Shown piece after piece: positions 2,750 to 3,520 of a stretch of 64,000 nucleotides of DNA. Position numbers and translations under genes: made by a program. This DNA comes from Ranitomeya imitator. Taxonomy: Eukaryota. Where the stretch lies: the NCBI RefSeq assembly GCF_032444005.1, contig NC_091284.1, positions 11,780,001 through 11,844,000 on the forward strand. Reading direction: 5' to 3'. The stretch's first letter is position 1; every line of letters begins with the position of its first letter. The notes beneath the pieces are model-generated. The model was not told where the DNA came from. It ran no database searches and saw nothing but the letters and a program-made list of their open reading frames with translations.

Positions 2750-3520
2750 TTGGCACAGTCCCCCGGTATTGACGCCCGGGTCTTACCTGCAGCCTCCTGT
2801 GCAGCCCCCCCCCCCCTGTATTCGCGCCCAGGTCTTACCTGCCGCCTTCTGCACAGCCCCCGCCTGGTATTGGCACAACCCCTTGGTATCGGCAGAGCCC
2901 CCCCCATATTGACGCGGGGGTCTTACCTGCCGCCTTCTGCACAGCCCCCGCCTGGTATTGGCACAACCCCTTGGTATCGGCAGAGCCCCCCCCCATATTG
3001 ATGCGGGGGTCTTAACTGCCGCCTACTGCGCAGCCCCCCTCCGGTATTGGCACAGCCCCCCCGGTATTGGCGCCCGGGTCTTACCTGCTGACTCCTGCAC
3101 ATCCCTACTGTATTGGCACAGCCCCCCCAGTATTGGCGCCTGGGTCTTACCTGCCGCCTCCTGCGCAGCCCCCCCTGGTATTGGCACAGCCCCCTGGTAT
3201 AGGCACAGCCCCCCGGTATTGGCACAGCGCCCCCAGGTATTGGCGCCCGGATCTTACCTGCCGCCTCCTGCGCCACCCCCCCAGTATTGGCACAGCCCCC
3301 CGGTATTGGCGCCCGGGTCTTACCTGCCGCCTCCTGCGCAGCCCCCCCGGTATTGGCGCCCGGGTCTTACCTGCCGCCTCCTATGCCACCCCACCGGTAT
3401 TGGCACAGCCCCCCGGTATTGGTGACCGGGTCTTACCTGCCGCCTCCTATGCCACCCCACCGGTATTGGCACAGCCCCCAGGTATTGGCGCCCGGGTCTT
3501 ACCTGCCGCCTCCTGCGCTG
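2750..3520. repeat. Minisatellite containing the POLQ exon-7 3' end and splice donor
   Basis: Repeats of gggtcttacctgccgcctcctgcgcagccccc...ggtattggc. Confidence 0.9.

What the first reader, a model, noticed from the sequence alone, without database searches (positions are those of the whole stretch)
2750..3520. Minisatellite that has amplified a POLQ exon end and its 5' splice site about ten times
On the POLQ strand each unit reads ...GGAGGCGGCAG|GTAAGACCCGGGCGCCAATACC, identical to the real exon-7 donor at 3503/3502. I count nine further intact GTAAGA donors and one mutated copy (TTAAGA, near 3013). The nearest decoy is 66 nt downstream and in frame, but that unit carries GCA TAG, so using it would insert a premature stop. 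Array length could therefore tune productive versus NMD-targeted POLQ mRNA (inference).
Basis: partly seen in the sequence, partly recalled or inferred. Interest (0 to 1): 0.7.

Follow-up and report, generated by a model that had tools for sequence, protein, structure and literature searches.

The report
Splice-donor minisatellite in frog POLQ intron
A 750-base tandem repeat that grew out of the exon 7/intron 7 boundary of a frog's DNA-repair gene POLQ puts nine intact extra splice signals and one dead copy behind the real one, but assembled RNA shows only the normal splice, as in similar repeats long known from human genes such as F7 and IFI6.

Summary
On the minus strand a real POLQ helicase-domain exon (3503-3662, the seventh coding exon by my count) ends in CAG|GTAAGA. 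A compound minisatellite (2747-3518) repeats the last 16 exon bases plus the donor. There are nine further intact CAG|GTAAGA sites and one dead copy (TTAAGA, 3015).

Spliced RNA contigs from three runs (two studies, two organism labels) join 3503 directly to the next exon at 319. No contig in four runs lies on the array. So the first donor is the one in use, and nothing supports decoy use or tuning by array length. Contigs cannot exclude rare or NMD-degraded isoforms.

The kind is already described. Minisatellites whose first monomer spans an exon-intron boundary are known in human F7, IFI6 (6-16), CBS, LMNB2 and PDGF, and in F7 only the most upstream donor is used (PMC1557585).

One other species has the same intron position with an 85-base intron and no repeat, so the array is a lineage-specific gain.

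About 32% of this window is minisatellite. The scan has already flagged the same kind in at least seven other genes of this genome (MFN2, ofd1, EMC1, GALNS, FLVCR1, TBC1D10B, STT3A).

Verdict: real, ordinary, a new member of a known kind.

The parts
3503..3662 (-). POLQ coding exon 7 (160 nt, helicase domain; [13 protein letters not shown]...[14 protein letters not shown] plus the first base of a split Gly codon)
   Evidence: E about 1e-20 to human POLQ helicase structures. RNA contigs cover 3501-3661/3664 with 0-2 differences and are spliced at both ends. Exon count.
3497..3505 (-). Authentic 5' splice site CAG|GTAAGA (cut between 3503 and 3502); phase 1
   Evidence: Joint 3503|319 (GT..AG, skips 3183) in contigs of X1, X3 and X5. 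8 of 9 positions match CAG|GTAAGT.
2747..3518 (-). Compound minisatellite of 11 units (66, 66, 47, 66, 107, 66, 69, 89, 88, 52, 56 nt). The basic unit is about 47 nt: 16 exon bases, the donor, CCCGGGCGCCAATACC and a G-run. Each unit also carries 0-3 copies of a 19-20-nt sub-repeat (GGGGGCTGTGCCAATACC).
   Evidence: TRF rows; unit dissection, GC 0.667 and 22 G-runs of 4 or more on the sense strand; the motif GTGCCAATACC occurs 15 times in the array and the window's only other matches are 3 scattered 1-mismatch ones.
3431..3439 (-). Decoy donor 2, CAG|GTAAGA, +66 nt, in frame
3365..3373 (-). Decoy donor 3, +132 nt, in frame
3318..3326 (-). Decoy donor 4, +179 nt, out of frame
3252..3260 (-). Decoy donor 5, +245 nt, out of frame
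3145..3153 (-). Decoy donor 6, +352 nt
3079..3087 (-). Decoy donor 7, +418 nt
3010..3018 (-). Dead copy, CAG|TTAAGA (GT lost)
2921..2929 (-). Decoy donor 9, +576 nt
2833..2841 (-). Decoy donor 10, +664 nt
2781..2789 (-). Decoy donor 11, +716 nt (last)
3447..3449 (-). In-frame TAG inside unit 1. It is the first stop met by any transcript spliced at any decoy.
168..319 (-). Next POLQ exon (exon 8; [16 protein letters not shown]...[10 protein letters not shown]), acceptor AG at 320-321, phase 1
   Evidence: Sequence; joint and contig piece 172-317 in X5
3843..4058 (-). Upstream POLQ exon 6, joined to 3662 in RNA contigs
   Evidence: Joint 3661/3662 to 3842/3843, GT..AG; ORF text
320..3502 (-). 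Intron 7 (3183 nt): the array, then a tRNA-derived SINE (about 2373-2722), a Tc1-like transposon (767-2351) and unique sequence

Best explanation
This is a lineage-specific intronic minisatellite. It arose when a segment of about 47 nt spanning the exon 7/intron 7 boundary of POLQ (16-21 exon bases plus about 30 intron bases) was duplicated head to tail, by replication slippage or unequal exchange, and then expanded. A 19-nt derivative of the same unit, which looks like a deletion between two GCGC motifs, was interspersed. As a by-product the intron begins with nine extra, sequence-identical strong 5' splice sites and one dead copy. The spliceosome uses the most upstream one, the copy that closes the real exon. 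This fits the 5'-to-3' 'most upstream site wins' behaviour shown experimentally for the human F7 intron 7 minisatellite, and it fits exon definition. The extra donors are therefore silent or nearly so, and the array is tolerated as close-to-neutral intron DNA. Shown here: the anatomy, the use of the first donor in RNA, and the absence of the array in one other species. Inferred: the mutational mechanism, the reason the first site wins, and neutrality.
For: Anatomy and counts. The RNA joint 3503|319 appears in 3 contigs from 2 studies and 2 organism labels, together with neighbouring canonical joints, which shows these are spliced mRNA. Depth is zero over 2737-3456 in all 4 runs. The core of each unit matches the real boundary at 39-43 of 44 positions in the proximal units and 35-39 of 44 in the distal ones, with CpG below expectation (45 observed, 78 expected). 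That is the pattern of a decaying, unconstrained array. Contig L001 from another species has the same phase-1 intron position, an 85-nt intron and no tandem repeat. 32% of the window is minisatellite (19 arrays), so arrays that catch a donor are expected in this genome. Precedents and mechanism: PMC1557585.
Against: Contigs drop rare variants and carry no quantitative information, and NMD would remove decoy-spliced mRNA. Low-level decoy use is therefore not excluded. The donors here are much stronger (8 of 9 match to the consensus) than the F7 sites (UGG|gugggu). Some in-vitro work with duplicated strong sites favours the downstream copy (my own knowledge: Eperon and colleagues; Roca, Krainer and Eperon 2013), so carrying the F7 result over is an inference. 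No DNA reads were laid, so copy number and polymorphism are untested.
Confidence: 0.8

Rival explanations
1. One reading: decoy donors are used at a meaningful rate. Every such transcript carries the TAG at 3447-3449 and is degraded by NMD, so array length sets the ratio of productive to unproductive POLQ mRNA.
For: All 9 decoys have the same 9-mer as the real site, and all lead to the same premature stop, which lies upstream of many exon junctions. In human IFI6 and CBS the first two pseudo-sites are used alongside the real one (PMC1557585 introduction).
Against: No junction from any decoy and no contig on the array in four RNA runs. In F7, LMNB2 and PDGF only the authentic site is used. The array is absent from one other species, so it is not a conserved regulatory device. 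The units are decaying: one donor is dead and CpG is depleted.
Confidence: 0.08
2. The array acts as an intronic splicing enhancer or U1 landing pad. The extra U1 sites and about 22 G-runs (hnRNP H/F-type elements) just downstream of the exon raise use of the first donor, or suppress premature cleavage in the 3.2-kb intron, so copy number changes splicing efficiency without decoy use.
For: There are 22 runs of 4 or more G on the sense strand, and the intron's 10 donor 9-mers matching at least 8 of 9 consensus positions (the real site and 9 decoys) all lie at the boundary or in the array. G-runs near 5' splice sites are known enhancers, and F7 repeat number has been reported to correlate with factor VII level (both from my own knowledge, not checked here).
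Against: Nothing here tests it. The orthologous exon is spliced in another species with an 85-nt intron and no array. The F7 study found no autonomous regulating element in the neighbouring intron sequence (section heading).
Confidence: 0.08
3. Assembly artefact: the array, or its copy number, is mis-assembled.
For: No DNA reads were laid on it. Tandem repeats are prone to collapse or expansion in assemblies.
Against: The units differ by private substitutions and carry a higher-order structure (88/89-nt pair; 66/47/107-nt units), which is typical of real arrays and not of assembler stutter. The exon-side edge is confirmed by RNA.
Confidence: 0.03

Closest known systems
Human F7 intron 7 37-bp VNTR (Borensztajn et al. 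2006, PMC1557585)
   Same: The first monomer spans the exon-intron boundary. The authentic donor is followed by several identical pseudo-donors. Only the most upstream site is seen in mRNA.
   Different: The F7 monomer takes in 4 exon bases and a weak site (UGG|gugggu), with 5-9 uniform 37-bp repeats, and is known to be polymorphic. Here 16-21 exon bases and a strong site (CAG|GTAAGA) are copied, in 11 units of 47-107 nt with an internal 19-nt sub-repeat. Polymorphism is untested, and the use of pseudo-sites after mutation of the first site is untested.
Human IFI6 (6-16) intron 2 and CBS intron 13 minisatellites (as cited in PMC1557585)
   Same: An exon-boundary minisatellite reiterates the donor many times (25 pseudo-sites in 6-16; 15-20 repeats in CBS).
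   Different: [quoted passage not shown] Here no decoy junction was seen, and any use would be unproductive because of a premature stop.
Human LMNB2 and PDGF intron 4 boundary minisatellites (as cited in PMC1557585)
   Same: Longer monomers (100 and 81 bp), 10-18 repeats, and only the authentic donor used. These are the closest in unit size and behaviour.
   Different: Different genes and taxa. No sub-repeat structure is described in the passage I read.
Other donor-spanning minisatellites flagged by this scan in the same frog genome (MFN2, ofd1, EMC1, GALNS, FLVCR1, TBC1D10B, STT3A)
   Same: Same anatomy: exon end plus donor amplified into the intron.
   Different: Different genes, unit lengths and copy numbers (5 to about 227). 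These are AI notes that I did not re-test.

Membership tests
Exon-boundary (donor-spanning) minisatellite, F7 IVS7 type | Head-to-tail array whose first monomer spans the exon-intron junction | tested here: met
   The array runs from 3518, 16 nt inside the exon, to 2747. The exon edge at 3503 is fixed by RNA joints.
Exon-boundary (donor-spanning) minisatellite, F7 IVS7 type | The authentic donor is reiterated as identical pseudo-sites in the intron | tested here: met
   9 further CAG|GTAAGA 9-mers and 1 dead copy; 11 matches against 1.47 expected.
Exon-boundary (donor-spanning) minisatellite, F7 IVS7 type | The most upstream site is the one used in mRNA | tested here: met
   Joint 3503|319 in 3 contigs and zero depth over the array in 4 runs. 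This is contig-level evidence only, so rare isoforms are not excluded.
Exon-boundary (donor-spanning) minisatellite, F7 IVS7 type | Copy-number polymorphism (VNTR behaviour) | not tested
   No DNA runs were laid and the single read-laying run went to RNA. Exact-ORF look-ups and a word search for the array ORF found nothing.
Regulated unproductive splicing (alternative 5' splice site coupled to NMD) | The alternative junction is observed in RNA | tested here: not met
   No decoy junction. Contigs have limited sensitivity.
Regulated unproductive splicing (alternative 5' splice site coupled to NMD) | The alternative site introduces a premature stop upstream of later exon junctions | tested here: met
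   The TAG at 3447-3449 is reached by every decoy isoform.
Regulated unproductive splicing (alternative 5' splice site coupled to NMD) | The alternative site is conserved across species | tested here: not met
   L001 has an 85-nt intron without a repeat. ORFs read into the intron in four further contigs show no unit-like sequence.
DNA polymerase theta (POLQ), helicase-like domain | Sequence homology of the exon to POLQ helicase-domain structures | tested here: met
   E 1.4e-20; the alignment covers 48 of the 53 residues, against human POLQ residues 323-370 of 5a9j. Flanking exons read as POLQ.

The most novel reading that the evidence does not exclude
Donor-spanning minisatellites are unusually frequent in this frog genome: at least eight genes, this one included, have been flagged in 755 windows. 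One reading is that this reflects a transcription- or splice-site-linked mutational process that seeds arrays at G-rich intron starts. In that reading low-level decoy splicing plus NMD would make array length a heritable modifier of expression for genes such as POLQ.
Probability: 0.05. Interest if true: 0.6.

Novelty: new member of a known kind. Interest (0 to 1): 0.2.

Why it matters
In itself it matters little. It is one more natural case of a repeat that copies a splice donor, in a genome that is about one-third minisatellite in this region. It has modest value as a natural experiment. Here ten identical strong donors (8 of 9 match to the consensus) compete for one acceptor 3.2 kb away, and the most upstream wins at contig level. 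That extends the F7 observation, made on a weak site in mammals, to a strong site in an amphibian. Taken together, the several such arrays in this genome could give a cheap in-vivo test of 5' splice-site choice rules if raw RNA reads were counted.

Tried and rejected
1. Conserved hairpin just after each donor (CCCGG at +7..+11 pairing with CCGGG at +21..+25, with apparently compensatory variants CCCAG/CTGGG and CCCCC/GGGGG). 90.9% of cells pair, but sliding the partner by +1 gives 85.5% and as much covariation. The paired changes are CpG transitions in a C-run/G-run context. The whole array folds no better than shuffles (z +1.64; 19 of 20 shuffles fold at least as well). Rejected as evidence of a selected structure.

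2. Looking for the array in other assemblies. Exact look-ups of two antisense ORFs over the array found nothing on record. A word search with the 157-aa array ORF found no relative among 2569 candidates. That blank covers only called proteins of 86-275 aa.

3. The closest relative's contig (P0001: 89% identical exon, same long exon end, GTAAGAC donor) could not be read because the sample's file is too large. That contig ends about 70 nt after the ORF, which would fit an assembly break in a repeat, but this is a guess.

4. Exon extension by 'donor hopping'. The exon end here (and in P0001) is 6 residues longer than in four other contigs. I found no recognisable decayed donor inside the exon, so I leave the extension as slippage in a GC-rich loop-coding stretch.

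5. Whether the 31-bp array in intron 4 copies the exon 5 acceptor. It does not: only about 7 bases (ATGATGG) are shared.

In one search the exon 7 variants were joined to exon 8 only inside a script, to find the first stop, and no joined sequence was printed.

Full report
**What is there**

Read on the minus strand, window 3662-3503 is an open 160-nt exon. It is flanked by ...tgtcacag| and |gtaagacc. Its 53 codons ([53 protein letters not shown]) match the helicase-like domain of human DNA polymerase theta at E about 1e-20, against residues 323-370 of 5a9j.

A scan of open frames on the minus strand finds six POLQ-like coding exons upstream. They begin at about 14344, 8698, 8511, 6596 and 4402, and the sixth is 4058-3843.

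The next exon starts at 319, after an AG at 321-320. It reads [16 protein letters not shown]...[10 protein letters not shown], in phase with the split Gly codon left by the donor.

**The repeat**

Tandem Repeats Finder reports overlapping periods of 47, 66, 88, 113 and 179 between 2760 and 3523. GGCAGGTAAGA with at most one mismatch occurs 11 times, all on the minus strand between 2781 and 3507, against 1.47 expected by chance.

Cutting the array at the donors gives 11 units of 66, 66, 47, 66, 107, 66, 69, 89, 88, 52 and 56 nt. Each unit starts with a copy of the last 16 exon bases (GCGCAGGAGGCGGCAG, with a few substitutions), then GTAAGA, then CCCGGGCGCCAATACC and a G-run. Each unit also has 0-3 copies of a 19-20-nt sub-repeat (GGGGGCTGTGCCAATACC). 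That sub-repeat looks like the basic 47-nt unit with the stretch between its two GCGC motifs deleted; this is my reading of the sequence.

| First intron base | Site | Offset from the real donor |
|---|---|---|
| 3502 | CAG\|GTAAGA (authentic) | 0 |
| 3436 | CAG\|GTAAGA | +66, in frame |
| 3370 | CAG\|GTAAGA | +132, in frame |
| 3323 | CAG\|GTAAGA | +179, out of frame |
| 3257 | CAG\|GTAAGA | +245, out of frame |
| 3150 | CAG\|GTAAGA | +352 |
| 3084 | CAG\|GTAAGA | +418 |
| 3015 | CAG\|TTAAGA (dead) | +487 |
| 2926 | CAG\|GTAAGA | +576 |
| 2838 | CAG\|GTAAGA | +664 |
| 2786 | CAG\|GTAAGA | +716 |

- Ten sites carry the identical 9-mer, an 8 of 9 match to CAG|GTAAGT. They are the only donor 9-mers of that quality in the whole intron.
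- Every decoy-spliced transcript would run into the same TAG at 3447-3449.
- The sub-repeat motif GTGCCAATACC occurs 15 times inside the array. The window's only other matches are three scattered one-mismatch hits.

**Which donor is used**

Four runs that share about 10-14% of the sampled words of 2700-3700, roughly the exon's share, were laid on window 1-4300.

- Contigs of X1, X3 and X5 (two studies, organism labels A and B) join 3503 to 319. The joint is GT..AG and skips 3183 nt.
- The same contigs also carry the neighbouring joints 3662|3843 and about 4058|4259, so they are spliced POLQ mRNA.
- In all four runs depth is zero from 2737 to 3456, which is the whole array.
- The X5 contig differs from the window at a few bases but has the same exon end.

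The first copy is thus the working donor. Contigs show presence and not absence, so rare or NMD-degraded isoforms remain possible.

**Age and origin**

A word search with the exon found six ORFs called on genomic contigs of other species.

- One of them, contig L001, has the exon ending ...EFYNLRQA, a G|GTAAAC donor in the same phase, an 85-nt intron and no tandem repeat.
- Four further contigs read from the exon into non-repetitive intron.
- Only P0001 (89% identical) shares this window's longer exon end (...YHRAQQAAAG against ...[10 protein letters not shown] here) and a GTAAGAC donor. Its DNA could not be fetched.

The array is therefore a lineage-specific gain at a conserved intron position, in a loop-coding stretch that is 6 residues longer in this lineage.

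The core of each unit matches the real boundary at 39-43 of 44 positions in units 2-6 and 35-40 of 44 in units 7-11. CpG stands at 45 observed against 78 expected. Both are what decay of unconstrained copies would give.

Three copies of a related 17-mer (GGGGCTCGTGCTAACCT) sit at the distal edge of the array and on either side of a SINE and a Tc1-like element. They are either SINE target-site duplication or old degenerate sub-repeats.

**Background**

19 minisatellite arrays (period at least 10, length at least 150 bp) cover 32% of this 64-kb window. With that density, arrays that happen to nucleate on a donor are expected without any special mechanism; this is an inference.

The scan's own notes list the same anatomy in MFN2, ofd1, EMC1, GALNS, FLVCR1, TBC1D10B and STT3A of this genome. 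These are unchecked AI notes. One of them reports, as I do, only the normal splice in assembled RNA.

**Comparison with what is known**

Borensztajn et al. [quoted passage not shown]

- In human IFI6 (6-16) there are 25 pseudo-sites, and in CBS intron 13 there are 15-20 repeats. [quoted passage not shown]
- In LMNB2 (100-bp monomer) and PDGF intron 4 (81-bp monomer) only the authentic site is used.
- In F7 intron 7 (37-bp monomer, 5-9 copies) only the most upstream site is used.

The POLQ array meets the defining features I could test: a boundary-spanning first monomer, reiterated identical donors, and use of the first site. It differs in having a much stronger site, longer and heterogeneous units, and an internal sub-repeat.

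**Mechanism, and how sure**

The most likely reading (about 0.8) is a near-neutral slippage or unequal-exchange array, whose extra donors are ignored because the exon-closing, first-transcribed site wins.

- An enhancer or U1-pad role for the donors and the 22 G-runs (about 0.08) is untested.
- An assembly artefact is unlikely (about 0.03).

A candidate hairpin after each donor, and array-wide RNA structure, were tested and rejected.

**Limits**

- All RNA evidence comes from contigs.
- No DNA reads were laid.
- The species names are coded.

**Verdict**

The feature is real and correctly described. It is an ordinary new member of a known kind, so interest is low.

Noticed in passing
window 1-64000: 19 minisatellite arrays (period at least 10, at least 150 bp) cover 20.6 kb, or 32% of the window. 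Among them are 31-bp x56 (4387-6139), 34-bp x40 (6583-7995), 29-bp x87 (11177-13670) and 20-bp x154 (44267-47366). POLQ introns 1, 3 and 4 are largely such arrays.
   Followed up: partly
window 4370-4560 (-): The 31-bp array of POLQ intron 4 ends about 15 nt before the exon 5 acceptor. Its unit shares ATGATGG with the exon 5 start but does not copy the AG acceptor.
   Followed up: yes
window 767-2351: A Tc1/mariner-like transposon lies inside intron 7, bounded by TA|CAGTG...CACTG|TA, with a transposase reading frame broken by stops and frameshifts. RNA-run contigs pile up on it at depths of hundreds, presumably from many genomic copies.
   Followed up: no
window 2373-2722 (+): A tRNA-derived SINE whose head carries a 25-bp x3.8 internal tandem duplication (2387-2481). 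It is flanked by near-identical 24-nt stretches (2345-2372 and 2723-2750) that look like target-site duplication. Very high contig depth (thousands) in all RNA runs.
   Followed up: partly
window 741-757, 2353-2369, 2731-2747 (-): Three copies of GGGGCTCGTGCTAACCT-like sequence (0.11 expected) at the array's distal edge and beside the SINE and Tc1 insertions. The motif resembles the array's 19-nt sub-repeat, so the repeat tract may once have extended further and been split by the insertions.
   Followed up: partly
window 3503-3530 (-) against L001 1950-1966 and P0001-P0006: The exon 7 end codes ...[11 protein letters not shown] here and ...NLYHRAQQAAA in the closest relative, but only ...NLRQA / NLRH(T/A) / NLRNS in five other contigs. 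This is a 6-residue lineage-specific lengthening of a POLQ helicase-domain loop, right where the array was born.
   Followed up: partly
window 13634-14344 (-): POLQ exon 1 reads as a long S/P/R/G-rich N-terminal segment with an internal duplication (...GSEDPTSPS...HRKPRAPSSRTS...GASGGAADTRD twice), as another note of the scan says.
   Followed up: no
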